Part shown: piece by piece, positions 31,621 through 64,000 of the stretch | Layout of the letters: every line of letters starts with the position of its first letter | How positions within the stretch are numbered: position 1 is the stretch's first letter | Source: Haplodiscus bocki | Taxonomy: Eukaryota | Direction: 5' to 3' | Assembly (NCBI GenBank): GCA_965655095.1 | Contig: OZ296657.1 | Coordinates: forward strand, 13,268,001 to 13,332,000 | Length of the DNA: 64,000 nt | Program-made: the position numbers and the translations under genes | Notes under the pieces: model-generated | What the model was told of the DNA's origin: nothing | Seen by the model: only the letters and a program-made list of their open reading frames with translations | Database searches by the model: none

Positions 31621-33747
31621 TTAAACAGGTGACAATGGTAATGTTACCGTTCTCATTGCAGAGTAGAGGTGCTTTTCTTTCTTTTTCGCACCCTCTTTCA
31701 CCTCATGCATATCCTTTTTCACACATGGACCTACCTCCATGTGTTCAACAGCGGTTAGCGCCGGAGCACGTGGGTTATACATGGAAGTTAACACAGTTGT
31801 CAATGCAATATTGTATGATGCACTCAGAAAGGTCTTACCAAACCCCAGAGTGGAACCGGTTAACTTATCTATTTCCATGTAACGCATGATCATAACTATT
31901 ACATCAATTAAAAACTTGATGAACAGAAAGAATGAAAAATAGATTCCGCAATGCTCAAGTACGTAAACTACAGGTCCAAATGTGTCCAAAAACGGATCTT
32001 TAAAATATCGAGCTGAAATAATCTTAACCACAAAGAACTCGGTTCATGAGGTATATTAGTGAAAACCGTCTGTACCTTCTTGGGCAGTGGTGTAGACAAA
32101 AAAAATTTGTGCGAAAATTTTAAGTACCATTCTCGAAGCCGCATTGATAAGGATGCTATCACAAAATCCTTTGCTCGTTACGAGTGTACATGCCTGCATC
32201 CTGTAATCCAGTAAAAGTGTGAGAAGCAACCGGGCTAATATACTGAGGTCCAAATATGGCAGGTTTGTCTTGATGTACGATACCAGGTGTTAGGGTATAC
32301 CAGGAATCTTCCTGATCCATGTCGAGTTGGAACAGGTTTTTGATGCGATCAGAACAGTTTTGAGTCGTAGCATGAGGATAGGTTTGTCGGGTTACAGGGT
32401 CAACGAATTGAATTTGTCCTCTGTAAAGAATCAGAATTTTATTATAGCACTGGTTCATTGTGTGAAGAGGCGAATAAACTTTTGGGCAAAGGTAGAGCCA
32501 TGCTACGCTTCCATATGTTTCCAGAAACATTGATCGGTTACCATTGAGCATGTAGCCAGCCAAACGAGGGTTTTCATGGCCTAGCATAAGATTAGTCAAG
32601 GTTTGAGTACGTTCTTGTTCGCATTGGTTTTGTAATAACTGTATTTCCGTCGCTTGGAGTAATCGCGAGCTTTGAAAAAATAAAAAATAAATCTTCGTTG
32701 CAAGGTGCATTTCATGGTAGGCAATCTTCAAATAACTATCGGGGTTCTCTGTTTGTAACTTTTGTGTTCCCTCTAACTGAGGATTGTGAGCGTAAAGTTG
32801 AAGGAAGTGGCCTTTCTCCTTTGGTCTCAAAGTTTGTAGGATCTTGGTTGCTCCAGTTTGATCGCGACCCAGGTTTCTCCCGATGTCAATGTCAGAACCT
32901 TCGCTTGAGCTATCCATATAAAAAGAATCATAGTCTGTGGGTTGGATAGATGTTGGCTTTCCGCAATGTTTTTGAGTGTTGTTCTTCACTTCAAATACGA
33001 ATTTAGAGCTAGAGTCGGCTCCACTGATAACGTAACACTTTCTTCCTTGTTTTACCAGGTTAACCTCCTCAGTTCAAACAATCGAGATTTGCGCAGTTGT
33101 CAGGATAGTCCCATATGTAAGGATAGGGGTCTAACGAAGTAGTTTCACATCCCAGTTCTTCCAAAGAGCATGGTAAAATTAAACCAGTATCAGATAAAAT
33201 TTTCCCGTTTTCTAACGTAACTTTCAGAGTGGTGGTTTGCATGTGAGGGAGGAAGGTGTCACGAGTGATCCAACCTTTACTGTTACATTCATTCCTGTAG
33301 TCAACTCTGGTGTCACTAGAGGTTTCTACAATAGGGTTTTTTGTGTCGAAAACAAAACTTATCGAAAGCCCAAGTAACGCTCGACATTGTTCTGGAGAGA
33401 TAACAATGTGACTTGTAATTCCTGCAAAAGTGTGATCAATGCTGCTATGATCATGGTGTCCACAATGCTTTTTTTTTCCGGACGTGTTGTAATTGGCTTT
33501 TTGTAACCTTTAATTCTTTTCTAAGATGTTTGGTGAAAAGGACAACTTTAGCCTTACTTATTTCCAATTCTTCAGGCATAATAAGGCTAGGTCGTACCTG
33601 ATTTATGACGTAAAGAGATTTATCAGTCATTTCACTGCAATCAAAATGAGCTGCATTCAGAGCATAGCCAACCTGATCTTCATCTGGAGTTAAATTGAAA
33701 GCTACTTCGACAGTATGTGCGACCATTTGGAAAAATATTAGCTTCAT
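31621..33747 (-). pseudogene. env: env: chuvirus-like class III fusion glycoprotein, frameshifted
   Basis: N-terminal hydrophobic stretch, AAHFDCS (YDC-type start), Cys-rich ectodomain, helix LQNQCEQER..LAGYML, AWLYLC..QCYNKILILYRGQIQFVDPVTR, C-terminal TM GIYFSFFLFIKFLIDVIVMI. Confidence 0.75.
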
Positions 33748-36375: not shown

Positions 36376-38150
36376 CTAAAGTTTATAACGCTGACGAGTG
36401 AGGGTACGAAGAACCGATTGAGAATTAGGATCGTTTGGCTGAGGTCTGTAATACCTTGGTTCTCTTGCTTTAGACTTGAGACTGTTCCGCAGAAATTGTT
36501 GTATCAGAGTAAGTGGTCTGGTTGCAGCCGAAGTTGACAGTTTTTCCTTCGCCGTCTCCTGTGAATGTTGTGATAGTTGTTCAGGTGTATTGGGTAGGGT
36601 TGGCGAGAAAAATTGAGGTGAGTCAACTCCCGAGTCACTGCTGGTGACTTTATCACGTTTGAGTGAAGTGATTGCCCGAGCCGTAGGTGATGGTTTGATT
36701 GGAAATGGAATGGGGTCTTCTGCGACTGGCTCAGTAAAGCTGTTCATTTTCCCAATTCTTTCTTCCAAGAAACGTTCATAAAAATCGTCATCATGTCGTT
36801 GGTCGTGTGGTACATATTCTTCAATCATAGCTGGTAATGATTCTTCTTTAGGATAGTATTCAACCAAATGGTTAGGGTGGACCGTTTGCATAACTGATCG
36901 GTCGTTGTAGTCTTGAATTTGATAGGTAGTACTAGTTATACGCTTGATAACGGCAAATGGACCCAGTCGTCGCTGTTGTAGTTTTTGACTTTTTGATAGG
37001 TCCTGCCGGTGGTTTTCGTAAAAAACTTTCTGACCGACGCCCAGACGGCGTCCTACTTTAAATTTGTTCCTGTATGCATGGGAACAAGCCCTCTGTTCGC
37101 GACATCTTTTCAAAGTAGGGGAAAAAATGTTTAAAGTCTCGCTCTCGATCTAACGGAGGGTGAGAAAGCTGTGGTTGAAGTAAATTCTGGAGAAGCTCAT
37201 TCTTCGTAGAGTTCTCGTCGTGAGTATGAGGAGGCAAGTCCGTACAGAAGTCGGAACAACATAAGTTATGTTTCTTTCGGTAGTGTCCCAATTTGACAGA
37301 CATGGGAATTTGTGGTTTGGCGTCGAAGACGATTTCGTAAGCCGTTTTACCAGTCGTGTAATTAACACTGGCATTGTGCTCGAACGCAAACTTTGGCGCG
37401 AGAGAAGCCCAGTTAGTGCCAGCATCGTTCAGAGAAATTCTCCAATAGCGAGCAATTTGCTGGTTCTGAGTCTCTACTTTGCCGTTTGTCTAAGGCGAGT
37501 GAGCTGTACGTGGTCGAAGGGTAATTCCCAACTCTTTAGTCCACTTGATGAAAACTGTGTTGAAAAAGGTTGTCACTCTATCGTTTATGATAGACTGAGG
37601 AATTCCAAATTGAAGTATCCATTTTCCGACTGCGGCACTGGTAGCTTGTGCTCCGGTATTAGTAACAAGATAGACCATTGGGAAACGCGAGAAAGAGTCA
37701 ACTAAGAGGAGACTATGGGTGTTCCGGTTACTCGGTGGATGGAAAAGTCCTTTATGGTCGATATTTATTGCGCAAAACGGTGCGGTATCACTTGGCCATT
37801 CTTCCAACGGTACCTCGTTAAGATGTTTAGGTTTTGGTTTATTATTCTGGCATGCAAGACAGTCAGCTGTTAAGGCCCAGATCCAGTCGAACATCCCTGG
37901 CCAATAATATAATCTTTTAGCGTTAGCATACGTCTTTGAGGCTCCCACGTGTCCTCTTATTAAAATGTCCCATGCGGAAGCAAGCTGAGAAAAGAGGTAA
38001 AGGTAAGCAGATTCGTAAGTTCCTTTCGGTTAATGTATCAGAAGGTTCATTATTACACAGAAGTTTGCCGTGCTCTTCTATGAGTAGTCGATCTAGCTCT
38101 TGGCCGTATCTGAGCAGACCTTTAGACTGTCAGTTTTCTGGAGCTTTTAG
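36376..38150 (-). pseudogene. pol: pol: integrase (HHCC, DDE core, GPF C-terminus)
   Basis: HVGASKTY..YYWPGM..CLACQ; NIDHKG..LVDSFSRF..FGIPQSIINDR..TNGKVE; RRLGPFAVIKRITSTTYQI. Confidence 0.9.
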
Positions 38151-38899: not shown

Positions 38900-39542
38900 C
38901 GTTCCGGTTAAGTATATCAGTGAACGCTTGGTTAGATCCTGGCGTCCAGATGATCTCCAAATTCTGGAACTTCGTTATTATAACCTGTTACCTGAAGAAC
39001 CGATGGGATAACTGTCTTTTGCGTCCCCATAGAGAGAGGATGGGTTTGTGGTCACAATACAAGTATATTGGAAAAGGAGATCCAATAATGTAATGCTCAT
39101 AAGTTTGCAAAGCTGAGACAATCCCACACAATTCCCTGTGGAGTGTTGACATCTTTCGTTCAGCTTTTTCAAAAAATTGAGAATTGAAGAAAATGATTCG
39201 CTTCTCTTCCGCGAACTGTTGTATTAGAATGCAACCAGTTACAACATTAGACAAATCTTCGTGACTATGAATACGATACTCAGTTAAAGGAATGGCGAGA
39301 CTTCTATTTTCACTGATTCTATACCTTATCATTTGGAAGACCTTCTAGTGATTTTCAGTCCAATGGAACAACGTAGAACCTCTAATGAGCTCGTAGAAAG
39401 GTTTTCTGCCCACGTGAAGGTTTTTGATGTAGCAACTGTAAAATCCAAGATATCCCTGCACTTTCATAACATCTCGTTTGCACTCGGGTGATTTGAGATT
39501 CTTTAGGTCATTGACCCGTTTGGCAATTAGCTGTATTCCGTC
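38900..39542 (-). pseudogene. pol: pol: RT C-terminus and RNase H
   Basis: DGIQLIAKRVNDLKNLKSP; GCILIQQF..STLHRELCGIVSALQTYEHYIIGSPFPIYLYCDHKPI. Confidence 0.9.
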
Positions 39543-39547
39543 GGTAG

Positions 39548-39668
39548 GCCTAGACCGTGCAGCAAAAATCAGTTTAATATTGGAGGTAGGCAGTGCCTAC
39601 CATGCCAGATATTAAGCTGACAAGAACAGATACTACACATGATCTTAGCCAAAAGGCCGAGAAGAGAT
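39548..39668 (-). ncRNA. U2: U2 snRNA copy, 3'-truncated (nt 1-121)
   Basis: ATCTCTTCTCGGCCTTTTGGCTAAGATCATGTGTAGTATCTGTTCTTGTCAGCTTAATATCTG.. with branch-recognition GTAGTA and Sm site GATTTTTG. Confidence 0.95.
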
Positions 39669-39766
39669 AACCCAAAAATATTCTATCTCCACATATAAAT
39701 CACAAATGTAACTTCCATCATGCAGTTTTTCAAATTCGCACATTCTCAGCTACCCCAGCTATGACC
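39669..39766 (-). promoter_or_regulatory. U2 upstream region, probable snRNA promoter
   Basis: ~98 bp nearly identical to 44138-44235, upstream of the other U2 5' end. No PSE consensus recognised. Confidence 0.55.
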
Positions 39767-40547
39767 TTGACTTCTTACAACATGACAGGACAACGATCCA
39801 ACGTCTTTGCATTCATTGTAGGCGCTAATTGTGGTAGTTGTTGCCAAACATCATGACACTGAAACTGAAACGCAAACTTTTGACCTTCAAAATTATGTTA
39901 TCAAACAGGTTGTCATCGAAAGTGCATGTAAAATGATTTCGCTAGAACACCCGTTAATGGTCTCAAAATGAGCAATTCACTTGCCAAAATGGTTCCGTGA
40001 GAAACTTTTGCAGTTTACGTACACCCAAACGTGCTAAAGCGCCAAATTGGTCTGACAGAGCTACGTAGGTCTGACAGAACTGTAGGAACCTGCAAAAACT
40101 CTTTTTGTCTACGTCAACGGCAAGTCAAAAAAGGATGTCCAATTCTCCGTAACATTACGTAAGAGTCCTAATTCACAAGTTATGAGCTTAAAATTGGCAC
40201 AAAACCAAGCACCCGCGAAGCAGTAGCAAAAAAAACCGTAAAACCAAACGTCCCAAAAGACAACGTATGCAACCTTCTGACTGATGCACACTTCTTATTC
40301 CCCAAGAAGAGTCTTCAAGCCTGAAAAGACTTCTGGTTGAGTCGAATAACCTAACTTATGGGCGATACTGGAAGAAAAAGATGAGAAACAAAAAATTCAG
40401 CTATACTGCAAACACGAAAACCCAAAAACGAACTTCATCAAACGATTCAACAAAAATGCATAACATCACTCAACACACTCATTATTTCAACTTCAAGGAT
40501 CACTGTTTAGGTCCAGTTGAGTAGGTAATGAGTTCAAAATGGTCGAT

Positions 40548-40696
40548 TGGGTCGTACCCGGTGGGAGTGTAAGACCGGGACAATCCCTGGTCCGGCTAAA
40601 GCAAGCTTTTTTGCCTAGACCGTGCATCAAAAATCAGTTTAATATTGGAGGTAGGCGGTGCCTACCATGCCAGATATTAAGCTGACAAGAACAGAT
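40548..40696 (-). ncRNA. U2: U2 snRNA 3' portion (nt ~38-186) downstream of the retrotransposon insertion
   Basis: ATCTGTTCTTGTCAGCTTAATATCTG..Sm site..stem-loop IV CCCGGT-CTTACACTCCC-ACCGGG..GACCCA. Confidence 0.93.
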
Positions 40697-43600
40697 GAAA
40701 TATTTGAATTAGTATAAATAAAACAAAATATACGAGGTAAGTTTTTTTTCAAACACTGGTTAGAATCATACATTTACAAAAGTAAATATCAAGAAAAATG
40801 GGGTTTGAGTTTTTGTCAGAAAAAGTTTGATTAATAGATTTGCGGAATTCCTGTCAGATGTTCTGCGGAGATGTTTCGGGAATGGTGGATGACAAGAGCT
40901 GCGGCTTTGCGAGTAAACGTTGTGATGTCCTTCTTGCTGCGGATGAACTTCTGGAGCACAGGGTATGAGGATCTCGAAAAACTGCCCAGAGTACCCAGCT
41001 GGATTGTGGCGATTGAGGTAGAAAATCCACTGACTTCATAGGCTCGTTTCAAGTTCTCATATTTCACTTGCATCTGCTGAGCATTCCATTGGAAAGTTTC
41101 TTGAGATTCAGCAGATACTTTGATGTCAATGATGGCAGCTTCTTTGGTCTGTTCGTCCTGCACAATGATGTCCGGCTGCATGTTTCCAAAACGTTGCTCC
41201 TTCAAAATTCTTAGCCGATGAGGAAACTGAGAGGCTAGAAGGTCTCGGACATCGTTGTGCCGTTTAATGATTTTCTTCCTCATCACGCTGCAGTTACTTA
41301 ATGTATGATTTAGGGTCTCACGGTCGGCTTGGCATTGACGGCAGTTTTGATTTTCAGGAAGATGATTCCACACAAAGTTTGATCTTACAGGGACTAGATT
41401 TAGCCTTGCGCGGTGGATGAATCTGAAGTCGCAGAGTTTTGTATGAAAGTTGAAGACTGCTTTAGTTGTTTGCGGTGTTTCGGCCAAAGTCCTCCAGAAT
41501 CGTCCTTGATTCGGCGCCCGTTGTATTTCTTTCAAACTCTGTTTCTGCAGGTATCGGGTAAGAACAGGCCAAGGGTCTCGGTACTTGGCGCCTTCTATAG
41601 AAAGCGTGACACTGTCCTCCAGCATGGTCAGTTCGACGTCTGTGTCCAGGTACTTTGCTAGTCTTCGTAAGCTTCTGGCTGTTTCCTTGATTGTATCACC
41701 GTACCCTCTCACGCTACCACTGTTGATTGCGTCTATAGCTTCTTGCAATGTTTTGTCGTCGAGTAACACGCGCTTTAGGTATTCGCCAAATGGTCCTGTT
41801 GTATTGAGGCTTCGGATGAAAGTTTGGAGAGTCATTTTGCTTTTGGCGAGAACTAGATCTGGCAGACCGGGACCACCATACATGCGATGAAGATGCAGGT
41901 ATGCCGTAGCAGCCCTTTCGGGTAGGTACAAAAGTCGTTTGGTCATTCTCCGAAATTGTCGATTCATCTTCTCCAGTTGGGTCATTGTGCTGTTAGAGTT
42001 CTCAAGCAAGTGGAACAGCATCGGGTAGATCTTTATTCGCAGTGCATGCAGTTTTTGCATTGGGGTCAACTCTGAGCATTCAATTAGTTCAGCCATGCGG
42101 AATGTTTTGTCGAAACACGAATCCAGTCCTTGGATTGTTGAGGGGAACGCTTCTGTACCAAGGTACTTGTATGCCCTGTCATCTTGGACCTCGGGAATGG
42201 ATGTTCCGTCAATGTCCAAAGTCAGAGACCTCAGATTCGCTACACCACACTTCTTTGCATTGAAAGAAAAACCAAGACGTTTTGCCAATTTCACTGTTCT
42301 GTTGAAAATGTCTTGGACCTCACTTTCTTCGTCTATGATGATGGCCAAATCATCCATATATCCAAGACAAACTGAGTTGGCCGACGTTGCTTCTTTGAGT
42401 ACGGGGTCCAAAACCAGATTAAAGAGGAGACCACTTAATGGGCAGCCCTGCTTGACACCGCGTGTGACTGGTACTGGTCCTGCGAGTTCTTCTCCTTCAA
42501 CGCTCACAGGCGTTGTCTTGCACCCCGCATATCTTATCAGCTCCACTATCCACTGGGGACAGTTGCACTGCTTTAACGCCTCGAAGATTAGCTTCTGGTC
42601 TACACTATTGAATGCATCTGACAGGTCCAGATAGATTACTGTCTTTTTCTTCTTCAGAGCGTTCCCAACTGCCAGTGTGTTTTCAGAGACACCACGTCTT
42701 CCAAAAGCAGCTCTTTGGCAGAAACCAATGCCTTTATTTACTTCAAGCCATTTGCTCAAGCGTTTGTAGAGAATGGAGGCGAGTAGCTTGTATGACACGT
42801 TTGACAGGGCTATTGGTCTAAAGCAGCGAAGTTCTTTTTCTTGACCAGCTGTGTACTCCTCTGGCTTCTTGAAGAGCATCATACTATTGTATGATTTCCA
42901 GCAGGACGGAGTTAAGCTGCTATAACCCATCGCATGTAGACCTTCAGTAAAATTCTTTGCGAAAACTTTTTCTTGTCTCACTTTGTCATAAGTCCATCCA
43001 TCTGGTCCTGGGGCTGAGTTTTTGTGTTCTAGTGCTCGTTCAACTTCGTACACTGTGAAACGACGGGCTAGGTCTTCTCGTCCCTCATTGCATGGCAGCC
43101 AGTGTCTTGTTGTCAAAGATGATGCCCCGTTGTTGTTTGGAGCACTCAACTGCTGTAACAGGCCATAGCGAAGATCTATCTCATCGACTTGACAAATGAT
43201 TTCAGGTACAAACTCGATGCGTTTCAATGCCGCTTTCATATCTTTACTGTAAAGTTTTTGTAATTCTGCAGCAGTCATCCTTGATTGCTGATGATGTGTC
43301 CTTCTCGCAGTGTTCCGTTTCATCTTTTCTTTCGGAGGCAGCAAAGCATTCAACCATTCGTCACATTCTTCGCCTTGCCAATTCAGATCGTTCTCATGTC
43401 TTTCATAGCTGTCGGGATTGACGCTTTCAGCATCGGTGTCATCTAGCTCTGCCAAAGGGGTACTAGAGACTGTACTAACAGATAGCAAGTCATCTGCTGT
43501 TTCGGCCACCGCCACAGTTTCTTCTATCGGTAACAAGGGCAAAGGAGGAGCAGGGGGTGCTGGTGGTAGTGATGATGACGCCGGTGGAGGAGACAGCCGC

Positions 43601-44107
43601 GACTTGGATGCAAGAGTAAGGGTTACCTTGCATTTACGTCTGTGACTACTCAAAGCCTTCTGAGTCCCAAACGAGCTGTTGCAACTGGGACATGGGTAAG
43701 TAGTCACCTGCACCGACGGGTCCCCGAAATGAGAACCTTGATGTGTTGTAGCTTTTCTGCGGTCACTTGTCAGGAACTTACAGTAAATACACTCAAAAAC
43801 CAACTCGTTTGCTTCTCTGCATCCAGGATCGCTCTGTCTGCAGACCCTCGAGTGTCGAAAAACGTCTCTCTTGAACGCGGACTCTTTGATGGCTCGGTCA
43901 CACGCCACACAGATTAGTGGAAAAGCCACAGGGAACGGCACCACTGCAGTTTGGCCATCGAAAATGAAGCTCGACATCTGCACGGCTCGACACGTGAGGT
44001 TGAAGCTGTCTCACTGCTCCTCCTGTCTTCTTGGACACTTCCTGCTGTCGTCTTGCTGTAGCGTCAGGAAGTAGGCTCGTCTTGACTTCAAGCTCGACAA
44101 AGAACAC
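40697..44107 (-). mobile_element. U2-targeting RLE non-LTR retrotransposon (Utopia, NeSL group)
   Basis: Single ORF inserted in U2 after nt 37/38 (GTAGT(A)|TCTGTTCTT), same orientation, no poly(A). Confidence 0.9.
40831..43977 (-). CDS. Intact non-LTR polyprotein (~1048 aa): three N-terminal Zn fingers, RT, CCHC, restriction-like endonuclease
   Basis: CVAC..H..C, CIYC..H..H, CPSC..H..C; SAPGPDG, FRPIAL, LDLSDAFNSV, GVKQGCPLS, YMDD, YKYLG; CRQC..ETLNHTLSNC, RHN, QPDI..IIDIK. First ATG at 43977 (the track starts at GTG 43983). Confidence 0.95.
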   Translation of the reverse strand: MSSFIFDGQTAVVPFPVAFPLICVACDRAIKESAFKRDVFRHSRVCRQSDPGCREANELVFECIYCKFLTSDRRKATTHQGSHFGDPSVQVTTYPCPSCNSSFGTQKALSSHRRKCKVTLTLASKSRLSPPPASSSLPPAPPAPPLPLLPIEETVAVAETADDLLSVSTVSSTPLAELDDTDAESVNPDSYERHENDLNWQGEECDEWLNALLPPKEKMKRNTARRTHHQQSRMTAAELQKLYSKDMKAALKRIEFVPEIICQVDEIDLRYGLLQQLSAPNNNGASSLTTRHWLPCNEGREDLARRFTVYEVERALEHKNSAPGPDGWTYDKVRQEKVFAKNFTEGLHAMGYSSLTPSCWKSYNSMMLFKKPEEYTAGQEKELRCFRPIALSNVSYKLLASILYKRLSKWLEVNKGIGFCQRAAFGRRGVSENTLAVGNALKKKKTVIYLDLSDAFNSVDQKLIFEALKQCNCPQWIVELIRYAGCKTTPVSVEGEELAGPVPVTRGVKQGCPLSGLLFNLVLDPVLKEATSANSVCLGYMDDLAIIIDEESEVQDIFNRTVKLAKRLGFSFNAKKCGVANLRSLTLDIDGTSIPEVQDDRAYKYLGTEAFPSTIQGLDSCFDKTFRMAELIECSELTPMQKLHALRIKIYPMLFHLLENSNSTMTQLEKMNRQFRRMTKRLLYLPERAATAYLHLHRMYGGPGLPDLVLAKSKMTLQTFIRSLNTTGPFGEYLKRVLLDDKTLQEAIDAINSGSVRGYGDTIKETARSLRRLAKYLDTDVELTMLEDSVTLSIEGAKYRDPWPVLTRYLQKQSLKEIQRAPNQGRFWRTLAETPQTTKAVFNFHTKLCDFRFIHRARLNLVPVRSNFVWNHLPENQNCRQCQADRETLNHTLSNCSVMRKKIIKRHNDVRDLLASQFPHRLRILKEQRFGNMQPDIIVQDEQTKEAAIIDIKVSAESQETFQWNAQQMQVKYENLKRAYEVSGFSTSIATIQLGTLGSFSRSSYPVLQKFIRSKKDITTFTRKAAALVIHHSRNISAEHLTGIPQIY

Positions 44108-44137
44108 CTGATCTCAGCCAAAAGGCCGAGAAGCGAT
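44067..44137 (-). ncRNA. U2: U2 5' end (nt 1-~30) followed by a diverged U2-like leader
   Basis: ATCGCTTCTCGGCCTTTTGGCTGAGATCAGG-TGTTCTTTGTCGAGCTTGAA..GCCTACTTCC. Confidence 0.85.
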
Positions 44138-44235
44138 AAAACAAAAATATTCTATCTCCACATATAATTCACAAATGTAACTTCCATCATGCAGTTTTTC
44201 AAATTCGCACAATCTCAGCTACCCCAGCTATGACC

Positions 44236-46986: not shown

Positions 46987-48380
46987 TCAATCGAACTGCA
47001 TGAGAACTAGGTTGGTCATTCGTTTGCGAAAATCGCTGTTCATAGGGGACAAAACTACCGGATTCTTGACTGCTGGATCGTCAAAATATTTAATTATTGG
47101 GCCTACTAGACCGCCAGGGCTGAAACTGCCGGCTCGGCTGTGAGTCTCGTCTTGGGCCAGAAGGAGAGCATGGATTGGTTCCAATATTTTGCCAGGTTCC
47201 TCTCGTCGGCGTTCCGGGAGAACCATTCCTGTAGTAGTTGTCATCATTCCTGTTAGCGAACTGATTCTGGTATCAATCAAACGATGGTCCACGACCAGAA
47301 CTGAATGAATTGTTTCTGGACGGATTACCCCAAATAATTCCTACGTAGAATTGTGTAGTTTCTTCGTAAGTCGCTTGTTGTGCGTCGGTTGTGTCCCTTC
47401 TAGCTTGATTTATGCTTCCAGCATTGTTATGAATGAACTTTCCAGATCCATGACTAGGTCCTCGGCGTTTGTTGTAATCGGTCCTGAATGTTAAGCGTTT
47501 TTGAGCCATCTTCCCGTTCTGTACTTTTTTGATTTCTTCATCCCGAATTTTCTTCCTACACCAGCTTGGAGTGTGTCCGTTGGTGTGGCAGTAATTGCAA
47601 AACTGCGTGGCGTTTTGTCGGCCCTTTTGGTTAGGGTCGGGTTGTCGTGTATTCTTCAGTGCAATTTCTCGATTGTCCTGTAGCCCGGAACGCAGATTTT
47701 TCATTTCTTGGGCCAGTGAGGCCAGTTGGATTTTGGTCTGTTCCTCATCATTGAGGAAGTTCGAAGAGACTTGATAACTTACGTATCGTTGGATGATTCG
47801 TGTGGAGAAATTGTTCCATTTTGCGTTAGGATTTTCCATCAAGTATTCTTGTGCTTTTCGTTGTAAGTATCTTGGACGAAGTCCTCGTAGAGTATAATCA
47901 ATGTATCAATGTCGCCTTTGTCTCCCTTGTGCTTGACGTGCTGCAGCTCTATCACCTTCTGCAATACCTTTCATGTCAGCAGGCCATCCTTTGTCGACAA
48001 TATTCTTTATTCGATGTAAAAAAACTTCTGATTTCTTCTCCGTCGCCTCGCACACAGTGTTCTACTTCCATTCTGTGACGGAATTTAATCCATTCGTCGG
48101 AAAAATTTGTTATGAATTGTTCCCGTGTGGCTGCCCAACTGGTGGCATTCTCGATATTATTTTCATACCACTCTGCCGCTGGTCCTCGGAGTATAGAGGA
48201 AAAAAGTGACTTTTTGCGAAAAGTATAACTAACCAAATCATCAAAATCCGCGGGTGCATCACCTAATGCGAAGTTTATTTTCCTTTCTATAAGTTGGACA
48301 AAAGATTCAGCGTCCTGGTCGGGATCAGTGCCAGAGAAACTTGTCTAAGGCTAAATCGGGGTATGCGAGATGACTGCTAG
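46987..48380 (-). pseudogene. gag: gag, frameshifted
   Basis: FSGTDPDQDAESF..LRGPAAEWY..; zinc knuckle CNYCHTNGHTPSWC (CX2CX4HX4C). Confidence 0.9.
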
Positions 48381-61939: not shown

Positions 61940-64000
61940 AGTAGTATACAAACAAGCATATGACACCAGCCGCGGCGGCCGCACCACACCCCACACCGCG
62001 TCCAATAGCCCGTATAAGCCGTAATTTCTCAGAAAAGACGCAAGACGCAAGACGCGTCCAATAGCCCGTATAAGCCGTAACTTCTCAGAAGACGCAAGAC
62101 GCAGACGCAAAAATTATACTATGTCAATGGGGGTACACAGGAACGAAAATGTGAGTTTATAAAAATGTTTTTTCATCTATATATCAATGGGGTAGCACAG
62201 GAACGAAAATATAATTTTATAAAAATATTTTATCATCTATAAATCAACATGATAGCATAGGAAGGAAAACAAAATTTTTTTTTTCAGTGATTATGTTATA
62301 TACAAATACTAAATCAATTATGAGTATATATATATATACTTTTCTGAGAAAACGACTTATACGGGCTATTGGACGCGGTGTGGTGTGTGGTGCGATCCTT
62401 CTTGGCCGATGTCATATGCTTGTTTGTATACTACTATAAGATAACAAATATGATATTATACTCTTATTCATGTATGTATACTGAATATAATTACACGTAT
62501 AAGAGTATTTTTTTTCTTTGTCTTGTACTCTTATATTTGAATATGAATAATAAGATAAATTTATCGTTTTCTAATTTTTATTTAAAGTAATTGCTATAGT
62601 ATAATCTTATTTTAACAAATGTGATTATGTTTAATTATAAATTATACGATTAGTTATATATTCTCAAATATAATGACAAAATATTATTCCCATGGATTAT
62701 TTTCAATATTATTTATATAACATCGTTTATCATCGAAAATACTCAAAGCCGTCTTTTTAATTCCCTGCATAAACATGTTATGATTAATCGACTTTAAAAT
62801 ATAATTAATACATTCATTTTCTAATTCTTCGCCATCTAAACAGATTTTATATTCCTCGAATTTAAGATTTTTTGACTGAGACTTAGAAACACCCTTTAAT
62901 TTGTTTTTACTATCATTTCCACATTTAAAAGCATACATTTTACTTCTCAAACAAATAAATTCATCAATCCAAATATTTTTAGGAGTTTCTATCTTAAATT
63001 TGCCGATTACTTTTTTATTTTTATTACTGAATAAATCATGATTTTTATCTATGTTACTAAAATCAAATATTTCTTCTAAATATTTTAAATCTTTGGTAAT
63101 GTTTTGTGTTTTTAAACTTAATATGAATGCATCCGTATCAATATAATGTAATTGTATATTTTCTTGTCCAAAATATGGTTGTAGAATATCATAATAGGTT
63201 TCGTACATATGTAATTTTGATAATTCTAATACGCTGAATCCGAGATAAATTGGTTTATTCATAAGAACTTCATTTTGTTTGTGAGTATAACTATCACAAT
63301 TTTCATATGATTTATGAATGCCATTGAAAGTCAATTTAGATTGTTGTTTTATTATTTCTCTATAATCATCTTTTTTAATAAATTTTATTTTTAATCTGTT
63401 CCGAACATTTTCCATTGTTTTTCCATAAAAAGCATTGTTTAATAATTTGTAGAAATCTTTTTCAAAATCACTCACAGCTTGATTTCGTTTCATTGTATTA
63501 AAATTTATATATTTCTTTAACCAATTACTTTGTTTAAATGATATTATATCATGAACTTTATCAACTACCATACCCTGCCTAACATAAAATTTTAACATCC
63601 TATAATGAAGCAAATATTTTTTCTTACCAGACCAATCACATATTACTTTTTTAAAATGTATATAAGTATCAGGTTTAATTTCTTTCATATAATCACTAAA
63701 TTTATCAGGATTAATTTTTTTATTCATAGGAGCAAATGGAAAATTTTTTGTTTTTTGTTTTATATTATTAGAATATTTTAAATCAAATTCAATAAAATAT
63801 CCAATATCACTATCATCAGCTGTATTCATTATATCTTCTAATTTAAGAGTATTATCAATTTTAATTTCATCATAAGGTAAATATTGACTCATCGAGTGAC
63901 CATATAGATTATTAGCATCTACATATAATATCTTTTTATTATCATCTGATTTTTTATATCTATCACCCATAACACTGCTTATACCACCTCTAATATTATT
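61940..64000 (-). mobile_element. Polinton/adintovirus-like element C: terminus plus pPolB, continues beyond the window
   Basis: AGTAGTAT terminus at 61940, GACGCA repeats, ~56-bp tandem duplication (61997-62110), (A)TCAATGGGG..CACAGGAACGAAAAT repeats, then the pPolB 3' end. Confidence 0.85.
62684..64000 (-). CDS. Protein-primed family B DNA polymerase (pPolB), C-terminal polymerase domain; 5' part outside the window
   Basis: IRGG, YVDANNLYG, YKLLNNAFYGK, YIDTDAF, GKFKIE, LRSKMY, KLKGV, DDKR; no stops across more than 430 codons. Confidence 0.95.
   Translation of the reverse strand, partial: NNIRGGISSVMGDRYKKSDDNKKILYVDANNLYGHSMSQYLPYDEIKIDNTLKLEDIMNTADDSDIGYFIEFDLKYSNNIKQKTKNFPFAPMNKKINPDKFSDYMKEIKPDTYIHFKKVICDWSGKKKYLLHYRMLKFYVRQGMVVDKVHDIISFKQSNWLKKYINFNTMKRNQAVSDFEKDFYKLLNNAFYGKTMENVRNRLKIKFIKKDDYREIIKQQSKLTFNGIHKSYENCDSYTHKQNEVLMNKPIYLGFSVLELSKLHMYETYYDILQPYFGQENIQLHYIDTDAFILSLKTQNITKDLKYLEEIFDFSNIDKNHDLFSNKNKKVIGKFKIETPKNIWIDEFICLRSKMYAFKCGNDSKNKLKGVSKSQSKNLKFEEYKICLDGEELENECINYILKSINHNMFMQGIKKTALSIFDDKRCYINNIENNPWE

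What the first reader, a model, noticed from the sequence alone, without database searches (positions are those of the whole stretch)
44067..44137. 5' leader of the U2-targeting element is a diverged U2 copy missing the target / branch-recognition site
Seen: after U2 nt 1-30 the sequence continues TGTTCTTTGTCGAGCTTGAA..GCCTACTTCC, which aligns with U2 TGTTCTT-GTC-AGCTT-AA..GCCTACCTCC, while the 9 nt TGTAGTATC (GUAGUA and the nick site) are absent. It is much more diverged than the two true U2 copies are from each other, so it is not a fresh TSD. Inference: an element-encoded U2 mimic that could aid homology-directed 5' joining and U2-promoter transcription while escaping re-cleavage and splicing interference.
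Basis: partly seen in the sequence, partly recalled or inferred. Interest (0 to 1): 0.7.

Follow-up and report, generated by a model that had tools for sequence, protein, structure and literature searches.

The report
Retrotransposon leader with decayed U2 remnant
The flagged stretch is the start of a Utopia-type retrotransposon sitting in a U2 snRNA gene; its first ~45 bases travel with the element and are probably a decayed remnant of duplicated U2 target sequence, not a working U2 mimic.

Summary
The sequence facts hold, on the minus strand. 44137-44109 is U2 nt 1-29. The next ~42 nt align with U2 nt 41-57 and 78-87, and the branch-site and insertion-site bases are missing.

The stretch is the 5' junction and 5' UTR of an intact 3.4-kb Utopia-like element (zinc fingers, reverse transcriptase, restriction-like endonuclease). 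The element is inserted at U2 nt 37/38.

The same leader is in every copy of this family that I could fetch. Those copies sit in U2 units whose flanks are far more diverged than the elements, so the leader belongs to the mobile unit and is not a fresh target duplication.

Its resemblance to U2 is only moderately above chance (p 0.002-0.09 depending on scoring; not significant in one subfamily). Two observations make a U2 origin likely:
- A sister 5' module has a clearer U2 nt 46-118 remnant, also lacking the target site.
- Two copies elsewhere carry 69-bp and ~110-bp target duplications.

A function as a mimic is not supported. The leader has no U2-like fold. It is the fastest-diverging part of its module. 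A near-identical enzyme works with an unrelated leader.

This is a new member of a known kind, of modest interest.

The parts
44138..44226 (-). Proximal promoter region of the interrupted U2 snRNA gene
   Evidence: 88 of 92 nt identical to the stretch upstream of the second U2 unit at 39669-39760. The same block lies upstream of every U2 unit in the related loci.
44109..44137 (-). U2 nt 1-29 (stem-loop I), the upstream half of the interrupted gene, with A23G
   Evidence: Identical to nt 1-29 of intact U2 genes of the same organism apart from A23G. The Rfam U2 model aligns only this part.
44067..44108 (-). Element leader nt 30-71. It comprises a 2-nt filler, a block like U2 nt 41-57 (44106-44087), a 28-nt core that is invariant within the family (44098-44071), and a block like U2 nt 78-87 (44076-44067).
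   Evidence: Present in all family-A copies. Shuffle tests give p 0.002-0.09.
43978..44066 (-). Rest of the 5' UTR. It has no upstream ATG and no detectable U2 similarity.
   Evidence: Sliding windows against U2 are non-significant. The only ATG from U2 +1 onward is the start codon at nt 161.
40831..43977 (-). Intact ORF of 1048 aa: N-terminal C2H2 zinc fingers, reverse transcriptase, then a CCHC motif and a PD..D.K restriction-like endonuclease
   Evidence: Pfam RVT_1 at 2.7e-31 and weak zinc-finger hits. The best solved relatives are R2 proteins, E 4e-34. The cysteine, histidine, PD, D and K columns are invariant across 11 relatives.
40697..40830 (-). 3' UTR, ending in the motif AATTCAAATATTTC that distant families share
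   Evidence: 3' junction comparison across families.
40542..40696 (-). U2 nt 38 to the 3' end, the downstream half of the interrupted gene
   Evidence: Rfam U2 hit of 111 bits in which model positions 1-37 do not match. Junction read directly.
39506..39668 (-). Next U2 unit. Its 5' part is intact (T4 variant), and a retroelement pol fragment replaces it from about nt 118.
   Evidence: Rfam U2 hit of 114 bits. The sequence after about 39551 reads as retroelement pol. L008 annotates RT_RNaseH there.

Best explanation
The stretch is the 5' junction and the first part of the 5' UTR of a full-length, probably active, Utopia-type site-specific non-LTR retrotransposon. The element is inserted at nt 37/38 of a U2 snRNA gene.

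U2 nt 1-29 are the upstream stump of the gene. Because the element has no promoter of its own in front of it, its RNA most likely starts at U2 +1. It therefore carries these 29 nt, which give the homology for a uniform 5' junction.

The next ~42 nt belong to the mobile element. They are most likely the decayed remnant of U2 sequence from just 3' of the nick. The proposed route is as follows:
1. An ancestral insertion made a long target duplication.
2. The duplicated sequence was captured into the transcript.
3. The bases around the target site (nt 30-40) were later lost.
4. The remainder drifted.

Loss of the target bases removes two liabilities. One is a second insertion site between promoter and element. 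The other is the AUG at U2 nt 29-31. Whether that loss was selected is inference.

Shown: the anatomy, the mobility of the leader, the moderate similarity, and that long target duplications happen.
Inferred: the U2 origin of this particular leader, the transcription start, and any benefit.
For: Anatomy:
- Rfam U2 hits, the ORF and both junctions were read directly.
- At least 12 different element families in the same organism all join at U2 nt 25-32 on the 5' side and at nt 37/38 on the 3' side.

Mobility of the leader:
- Family-A copies in three different U2 unit types share the leader.

Similarity to U2:
- It is confined to the first window after the junction, p about 0.003, and the controls are null.
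- An independent sister module H has U2 nt 1-30, then TA, then an 83-nt stretch that aligns with U2 nt 44-118, p about 0.0015.

Route of capture:
- In L010 the H copy is preceded by intact U2 nt 1-105 and followed by U2 from nt 37. That is a 69-bp target duplication.
- In L015, from another genome, a 40%-identical element is preceded by U2 up to about nt 148 and then by U2 nt 4-28.

RNA starting at U2 +1:
- Extra internal U2 5' pieces restart exactly at +1 at L003:8460 and L007:15893, and another internal U2 5' piece lies at L013:7690.

Loss of the AUG:
- T30G removes the U2 AUG, and the 5' UTR has no upstream ATG.
Against: - The similarity is short (17 U2 bases with 3 insertions, plus 9 of 10) and depends on the scoring scheme (p up to 0.09).
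- It is not significant in the A2 subfamily, where the U2-matching bases TTCTT and CTTCC have changed.
- Part of the first block is equally well explained as a copy of the start-codon region.
- The A and H leaders do not align significantly with each other (p 0.13-0.29), so a shared capture is unproven.
- No transcript data exist for any of this.
Confidence: 0.6

Rival explanations
1. The leader is an ordinary family-specific 5' UTR, and its likeness to U2 is coincidence or comes partly from an internal duplication of the start-codon region. On this reading the 'missing 9 nt' is just the small target deletion (nt ~30-37) that every Utopia insertion in this genome makes.
For: - p values reach 0.09, and the A2 leader is not significant.
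- The 10-mer TGTCGAGCTT is repeated at the ORF start with p about 0.02, and GTCGAGC occurs three times.
- L002 has a 16-nt tandem duplication in that region.
- All other families also lack nt ~31-37 without any U2-like leader.
Against: - The match sits exactly at the junction, is collinear with U2, and is the only window of the element that scores.
- A second, unrelated leader (H) shows the same design more clearly.
- Two leaders of about 12 reaching p of 0.003 or less is itself unlikely by chance.
- Long target duplications that would seed such leaders are seen directly.
Confidence: 0.27
2. One reading: the leader is a selected, element-encoded U2 mimic that promotes 5' joining and U2-type expression while avoiding re-cleavage and interference with splicing.
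For: - The target site and GUAGUA are absent from this and from every other leader seen.
- In arrays crowded with at least 12 rival families, a leader holding an intact target would expose the element to being cut off from its promoter (inference).
- The 28-nt core is invariant among the copies.
Against: - There is no U2-like structure beyond stem-loop I. The MFE z-score is +0.15 to +1.4, against -3.5 for real U2.
- Between A1 and A2, 5' UTR nt 30-160 differ at 16 of 131 positions, against 8 of 540 in the adjoining ORF (Fisher 4e-7).
- The invariant core is no more than the 98.5% module identity predicts.
- Family H has the same RT/endonuclease part with a different leader and has three identical copies.
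- U2 nt 41-87 lie on the wrong side of the break to guide 5' joining.
Confidence: 0.1
3. The leader is not part of the element. It is the 5' part of an old, mutated U2 pseudogene into which the element happened to insert.
For: The window copy lies in a solitary, diverged U2 locus whose neighbouring U2 copy is a truncated variant.
Against: The same leader, with the same gap, precedes the element in U2 units of three different flank types on other contigs.
Confidence: 0.02

Closest known systems
Utopia (U2 snRNA gene-specific non-LTR retrotransposons, NeSL clade; Kojima and Jurka 2015, PMC4640811)
   Same: - The 3' flank resumes at U2 nt 38/39.
- A single ORF has N-terminal zinc fingers, RT and a C-terminal zinc finger plus restriction-like endonuclease.
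- 5' boundaries are variable.
- Several families co-reside in U2 arrays, and disrupted units are common.
- Tandem copies occur.
   Different: - That paper reports no target duplication for arthropod families, 20-bp duplications for reptile families, and unresolved 5' ends for many.
- I found no description there of a U2-derived leader lacking the target site, of 69-110-bp target duplications, or of swapped 5' modules.
- The host here is unidentified.
R2 elements whose ribozyme cuts upstream in the 28S rRNA (Eickbush, Burke and Eickbush 2013, PMC3774820)
   Same: [quoted passage not shown] Here U2 nt 1-29 would play that part.
   Different: R2 is cut out of a Pol I co-transcript by an HDV-like ribozyme. 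Here no ribozyme was found, and the RNA would simply start at the U2 start site.
SLACS/CZAR elements in trypanosomatid spliced-leader RNA genes (from my own knowledge, not checked in a paper here)
   Same: A restriction-like-endonuclease element sits a few nucleotides into a small-RNA gene. It has a long (about 49-bp) target duplication and is expressed from the host gene's start site.
   Different: The target gene, clade and host differ. There the duplication is a regular feature, not a decayed remnant.
Keno (U2-targeting, Tx1 group, AP-endonuclease type; cited in PMC4640811)
   Same: The same insertion site in U2.
   Different: Keno has an AP-like endonuclease. This ORF has none and carries a C-terminal restriction-like endonuclease.

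Membership tests
Utopia | Insertion at a fixed site in U2 snRNA genes, with the 3' flank starting at U2 nt 38/39 | tested here: met
   The window 3' junction is ...AAATATTTC followed by ATCTGTTC, that is U2 nt 38. All relatives in L001-L015 show the same.
Utopia | C-terminal CCHC zinc finger plus PD..D/ExK restriction-like endonuclease, and no AP endonuclease | tested here: met
   Columns C879, C882, H891, C896, P935, D936, D951 and K953 are invariant in 11 relatives. A weak zf-RVT hit lies at 855-902 and there is no Exo_endo_phos hit. R2 proteins are the best solved relatives.
Utopia | One to three N-terminal zinc fingers and no Myb domain | tested here: met
   Weak C2H2 hits at residues 96-116. 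Cysteine and histidine columns at 23-26, 63-66, 79-83 and 96-112 are invariant. There is no Myb hit.
Utopia | RT groups with Utopia families inside the NeSL clade | not tested
   No reference Utopia or NeSL protein sequences were available in the tools. The nearest named proteins are spider 'R2' annotations at 26-27% identity.
Keno (Tx1 group) | N-terminal AP-like endonuclease | tested here: not met
   No Exo_endo_phos domain in the ORF.
R2 | Insertion in 28S rDNA, a Myb domain, and a 5' HDV-like ribozyme | tested here: not met
   The target is U2. There is no Myb hit. Rfam finds no ribozyme family in the window or in the leader region.
U2 snRNA (the leader as a U2 gene or mimic) | Stem-loops IIa/IIb, Sm site and stem-loops III/IV, as scored by the Rfam model RF00004 | tested here: not met
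   31 bits against a gathering score of 46, all of it from nt 1-33. Later model segments are skipped. The fold z-score is not below shuffles.

The most novel reading that the evidence does not exclude
In U2 arrays crowded with a dozen competing Utopia families, elements repeatedly capture long target duplications as new leaders. Only lineages in which the duplicated target site has been excised survive, because an intact site between promoter and element lets a rival insert there and cut the element off from its promoter. The family-A and family-H leaders would then be two independent 'immunised' U2 remnants, the trace of competition among site-specific retrotransposons for a limited set of snRNA promoters.
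Probability: 0.25. Interest if true: 0.55.

Novelty: new member of a known kind. Interest (0 to 1): 0.3.

Why it matters
Utopia elements are known, but their 5' ends are poorly resolved and their expression and 5' joining have not been studied.

This locus and its relatives give a compact natural data set:
- More than a dozen families in one U2 array system.
- Uniform junctions at U2 nt 25-32.
- Restarts at U2 +1.
- Long target duplications caught in the act.
- Leaders that look like their decayed products.

The set makes two questions directly testable. Do these elements use the snRNA promoter? Does target-derived sequence on the RNA guide second-strand joining, as is proposed for R2, which is now being developed for gene insertion?

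The specific claim of a functional U2 mimic does not hold up, so the finding itself is of modest weight.

Tried and rejected
1. Rfam U2 covariance model on the leader region of the window and of family H. Only nt 1-33 or 1-30 score, so there is no U2-like structure beyond stem-loop I.
2. Thermodynamic folding of the leaders of three family-A copies. It is no better than shuffles. With only three variants and an invariant core, no covariation test was possible.
3. By eye, the leaders of families B, C and E (L003:3616, L003:8460, L005:2176) looked U2-like. Shuffle tests gave p 0.28-0.98, so I dropped the idea.
4. Direct homology between the A and H leaders is not significant.
5. The idea that G4 and G30 mark an element-specific U2 variant. 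G4 is simply the normal U2 of this organism, and the T4 copy in the window is the odd one.
6. A metagenome scan for more relatives gave one short, 5'-truncated contig, which adds only another 3' junction.
7. Host identification failed:
   - Other window ORFs are repeats or retroelement parts.
   - Accession strings are not in the paper library.
   - The nearest named proteins are distant spider annotations.
8. tRNA-like stretches seen by eye in the 5' UTRs of L015 and L003 were not called by ARAGORN.
9. My first synonymous/non-synonymous count was out of register. It was redone.

The large representative protein search and structure prediction were not needed and were not run.

Full report
**What is at the coordinates**

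The feature lies on the minus strand. Rfam finds two U2 snRNA matches in the window. The match at 39668-39506 has an intact 5' part. In the match at 40731-40542, the first ~37 model positions do not match.

Reading the minus strand from 44400 to 39300 gives this order:
- A U2 proximal promoter block at 44226-44138. It is 88/92 identical to the block in front of the second unit.
- U2 nt 1-29 at 44137-44109.
- A 131-nt 5' UTR.
- An intact ORF at 43977-40831.
- A 134-nt 3' UTR ending ...AAATATTTC at 40697.
- U2 from nt 38 to its end, at 40696-40542.

The ORF has C2H2 zinc fingers and a reverse transcriptase (Pfam 2.7e-31). It also has a C-terminal CCHC motif plus a PD..D.K nuclease motif, invariant across relatives. 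Its best solved relatives are R2 proteins. It has no AP endonuclease and no Myb domain.

This is the anatomy of Utopia, the U2-specific restriction-like-endonuclease retrotransposons of the NeSL clade. Their 3' flank starts at U2 nt 39 by the authors' numbering (PMC4640811).

**The observation**

After U2 nt 1-29 come two bases, GG. Then TGTTCTTTGTCGAGCTTGAA aligns with U2 nt 41-57 with three inserted bases. After 10 more bases, GCCTACTTCC matches U2 nt 78-87 at 9 of 10 positions. U2 nt 30-40 are absent.

Against dinucleotide shuffles the local alignment gives:
- p 0.009-0.013.
- p 0.004 unconstrained, and 0.002 if the alignment must be collinear with U2.
- p 0.002-0.09 over three scoring schemes and two query lengths.
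- p 0.003 in a run whose controls were all null: reverse complement of U2, reversed U2, and seven later windows of the element.

So the match is above chance, but not by much.

A caution applies. The 10-mer TGTCGAGCTT inside the first block recurs exactly at the start codon, which is itself a 2% event. Part of the block could therefore come from an internal duplication. One copy (L002) has a fresh 16-nt duplication at that spot.

**Other copies**

A word-based protein search found relatives only in unnamed assemblies. I fetched their contigs.

L008 is the same locus as the window in sample ERZ26859043, so that sample is the same organism.

Family-A elements occur at L002:3388 and at L001:1521, L007:351 and L007:4847. 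All have U2 nt 1-29, a 2-nt filler, the same gap and the same leader. The 28-nt core GTCGAGCTTGAAGTCAAGACGAGCCTAC is invariant.

The U2 units that hold these copies differ. The upstream 300 nt are about 80% alike between the window and the others (191/236 and 192/243). The window and L002 elements are 92-97% alike throughout. The leader therefore moves with the element.

**The wider setting**

The same organism's U2 arrays have units of about 1.09 kb and hold at least 12 different element families. Each family has its own 5' UTR. All of them join at U2 nt 25-32 on the 5' side and at nt 37/38 on the 3' side. A small target deletion of about nt 31-37 is thus the rule here, and nt 1-29 are common to all.

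In several elements, extra U2 5' pieces inside the 5' UTR restart exactly at U2 +1 (L003:8460, L007:15893), and another internal U2 5' piece lies at L013:7690. The simplest reading is that the RNA template begins at the U2 start site. That is an inference, and no transcript data are available.

This parallels R2 elements whose RNA keeps upstream 28S sequence, which is proposed to anneal to the target and give uniform 5' junctions (PMC3774820).

**Is the leader U2-derived?**

Two further results raise the odds.

First, family H (protein P0032) shares more than 98% of its last ~900 residues with subfamily A2, but has a different N-terminus and a different 5' UTR. After U2 nt 1-30 and the two bases TA, its leader aligns with U2 nt 44-118 over 83 nt. 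Shuffle p is about 0.0015 with gap-tolerant scoring and 0.02-0.05 with harsh scoring. It also lacks the target and branch-site bases. Two leaders out of about 12 reaching p of 0.003 or less, both starting right at the junction and both collinear with U2, is unlikely by chance.

Second, the route by which U2 sequence 3' of the nick can end up in front of an element is seen directly. In L010 the H copy is preceded by the promoter and intact U2 nt 1-105. Then come U2 nt 8-30 and the H leader, and the 3' side resumes at U2 nt 37. That is a 69-bp target duplication. The same element in L009 and L011 has the ordinary junction. In L015, from another genome (GCA_029980085.1), a 40%-identical element is preceded by U2 up to about nt 148 and then by U2 nt 4-28. 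If such a copy is transcribed from U2 +1, the duplicated U2 becomes part of the next generation's leader.

**Is it a functional mimic?**

The evidence is against this.
- The Rfam U2 model gives the window leader 31 bits (gathering score 46), all from nt 1-33. The H leader behaves alike.
- Predicted folding of the first 148 nt has z-scores of +0.15 to +1.4 in three copies. Real U2 from the same organism scores -3.5.
- Subfamilies A1 and A2 share a 5' module whose first 540 ORF bases differ at 8 sites, 3 synonymous and 5 not. Leader nt 30-75 differ at 7 of 46 sites, and the whole 5' UTR from nt 30 at 16 of 131 (Fisher 5e-5 and 4e-7).
- The changes fall on the very bases that match U2: TTCTT becomes TTTCC, and CTTCC becomes CTTTG. 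As a result the A2 leader is no longer significantly U2-like.
- Family H shows that the same enzyme backbone spreads with an unrelated leader. It has three identical copies on three contigs.
- U2 nt 41-87 lie downstream of the break, so they cannot help join the 5' end to the upstream stump. The useful homology is nt 1-29.

**What remains plausible**

A leader with an intact duplicated target would offer rival elements an insertion site between promoter and element. It would also keep the AUG at U2 nt 29-31, which opens a short upstream reading frame. The family-A 5' UTR has no upstream ATG, because T30 is G. Loss of nt 30-40 removes both problems. I cannot tell from these data whether this was selected or is just what survived.

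**Verdict**

The sequence facts are right, and the leader belongs to the element. It is probably (about 0.6) a decayed U2 target-duplication remnant. It is not a U2 mimic in structure or in conservation.

The element is a new member of the known Utopia kind in an unidentified host. Membership by RT phylogeny was not tested, for lack of reference sequences.

**Housekeeping**

The window holds 1116 N, and I did not try to fill them. No contig looked human. The retroelement with an envelope-like gene next to the U2 units was only described.

Noticed in passing
window 40831-43977 compared with L001, L002, L007, L009: The elements are mosaics. A1 and A2 are 98.5% identical over the first 540 ORF bases but 75-77% identical over the 3' half. 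H shares the 3' 85% with A2 at more than 98% but has a different N-terminus and 5' UTR. L007's two adjacent copies are identical at the 5' end and 93-97% alike further on. The 5' and 3' modules are being exchanged, by template switching or by array recombination.
   Followed up: partly
L010:5305-5430 and L010:9350-9420; L015:1-150 and L015:3720-3870: Two elements have long target duplications (69 bp and about 110 bp of U2). In each, an internal U2 5' piece (nt 8-30 or nt 4-28) lies between the duplicated U2 and the element.
   Followed up: yes
L002:520-570 and L012:4985-5040: These are head-to-tail joins. The complete 3' end of one element (...AATTTAAATATTTG) is followed by a short A-rich filler, then U2 nt 8-32, then a 5'-truncated element, with no promoter between them. 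The U2 piece in L002 reads ATCAAGT where the array U2 has ATCATGT.
   Followed up: no
L003:8432-8600 and L013:7638-7760: One family's 5' UTR is built from two or three repeats of a U2 5' fragment (nt ~6-25) followed by a small hairpin (CTCTT..AAGAG) and about 30 more bases.
   Followed up: no
3' ends of elements in the window (40697-40712) and in L002, L003, L005, L006, L007, L009: Families that are only 46-50% identical in protein share almost the same last 14 nt (AATT[CT]AAATATTTC). This may be the RNA feature that the reverse transcriptase recognises to start copying.
   Followed up: no
window 32159-32989 (-), 36376-37113 (-), 38988-39332 (-): An ORF matches a viral fusion glycoprotein family (Monjiviricetes_fusion, 2e-19). 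It lies near integrase-like and RT/RNase H-like ORFs. Together they look like an envelope-bearing LTR retroelement, whose pol fragment truncates the second U2 unit at about nt 118.
   Followed up: no
window 62684-63970 (-): This 428-aa ORF has no Pfam hit. It has more than 2400 relatives at E of 1e-5 or less, and the 120 listed are 74-84% identical. All are from unnamed assemblies, and a few carry DNA_pol_B_2 or Endonuclease_7 domains. It is a very high-copy repeat gene, possibly part of a Polinton/Maverick-like element.
   Followed up: no
window 39665 (minus strand, U2 nt 4): The second U2 unit has T at nt 4, where all array U2 genes and all element-flanking stumps have G. With its 3' truncation it is a dead variant copy.
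   Followed up: yes
window 43975-43991 and 44092-44098: GTCGAGC occurs three times in the 5' UTR and ORF start, and TGTCGAGCTT occurs twice (p about 0.02). L002 has a 16-nt tandem duplication at the same spot. The start region may be prone to slippage.
   Followed up: partly
L015:215-330 and L003:8895-8965: Stretches in two 5' UTRs look tRNA-like by eye (GGTTCAATTCC-type T-arm). ARAGORN calls nothing there.
   Followed up: partly
window 47273-47842 (-): A weak KilA-N domain hit (E 6e-4, below the curated cut-off) in a 189-aa ORF.
   Followed up: no
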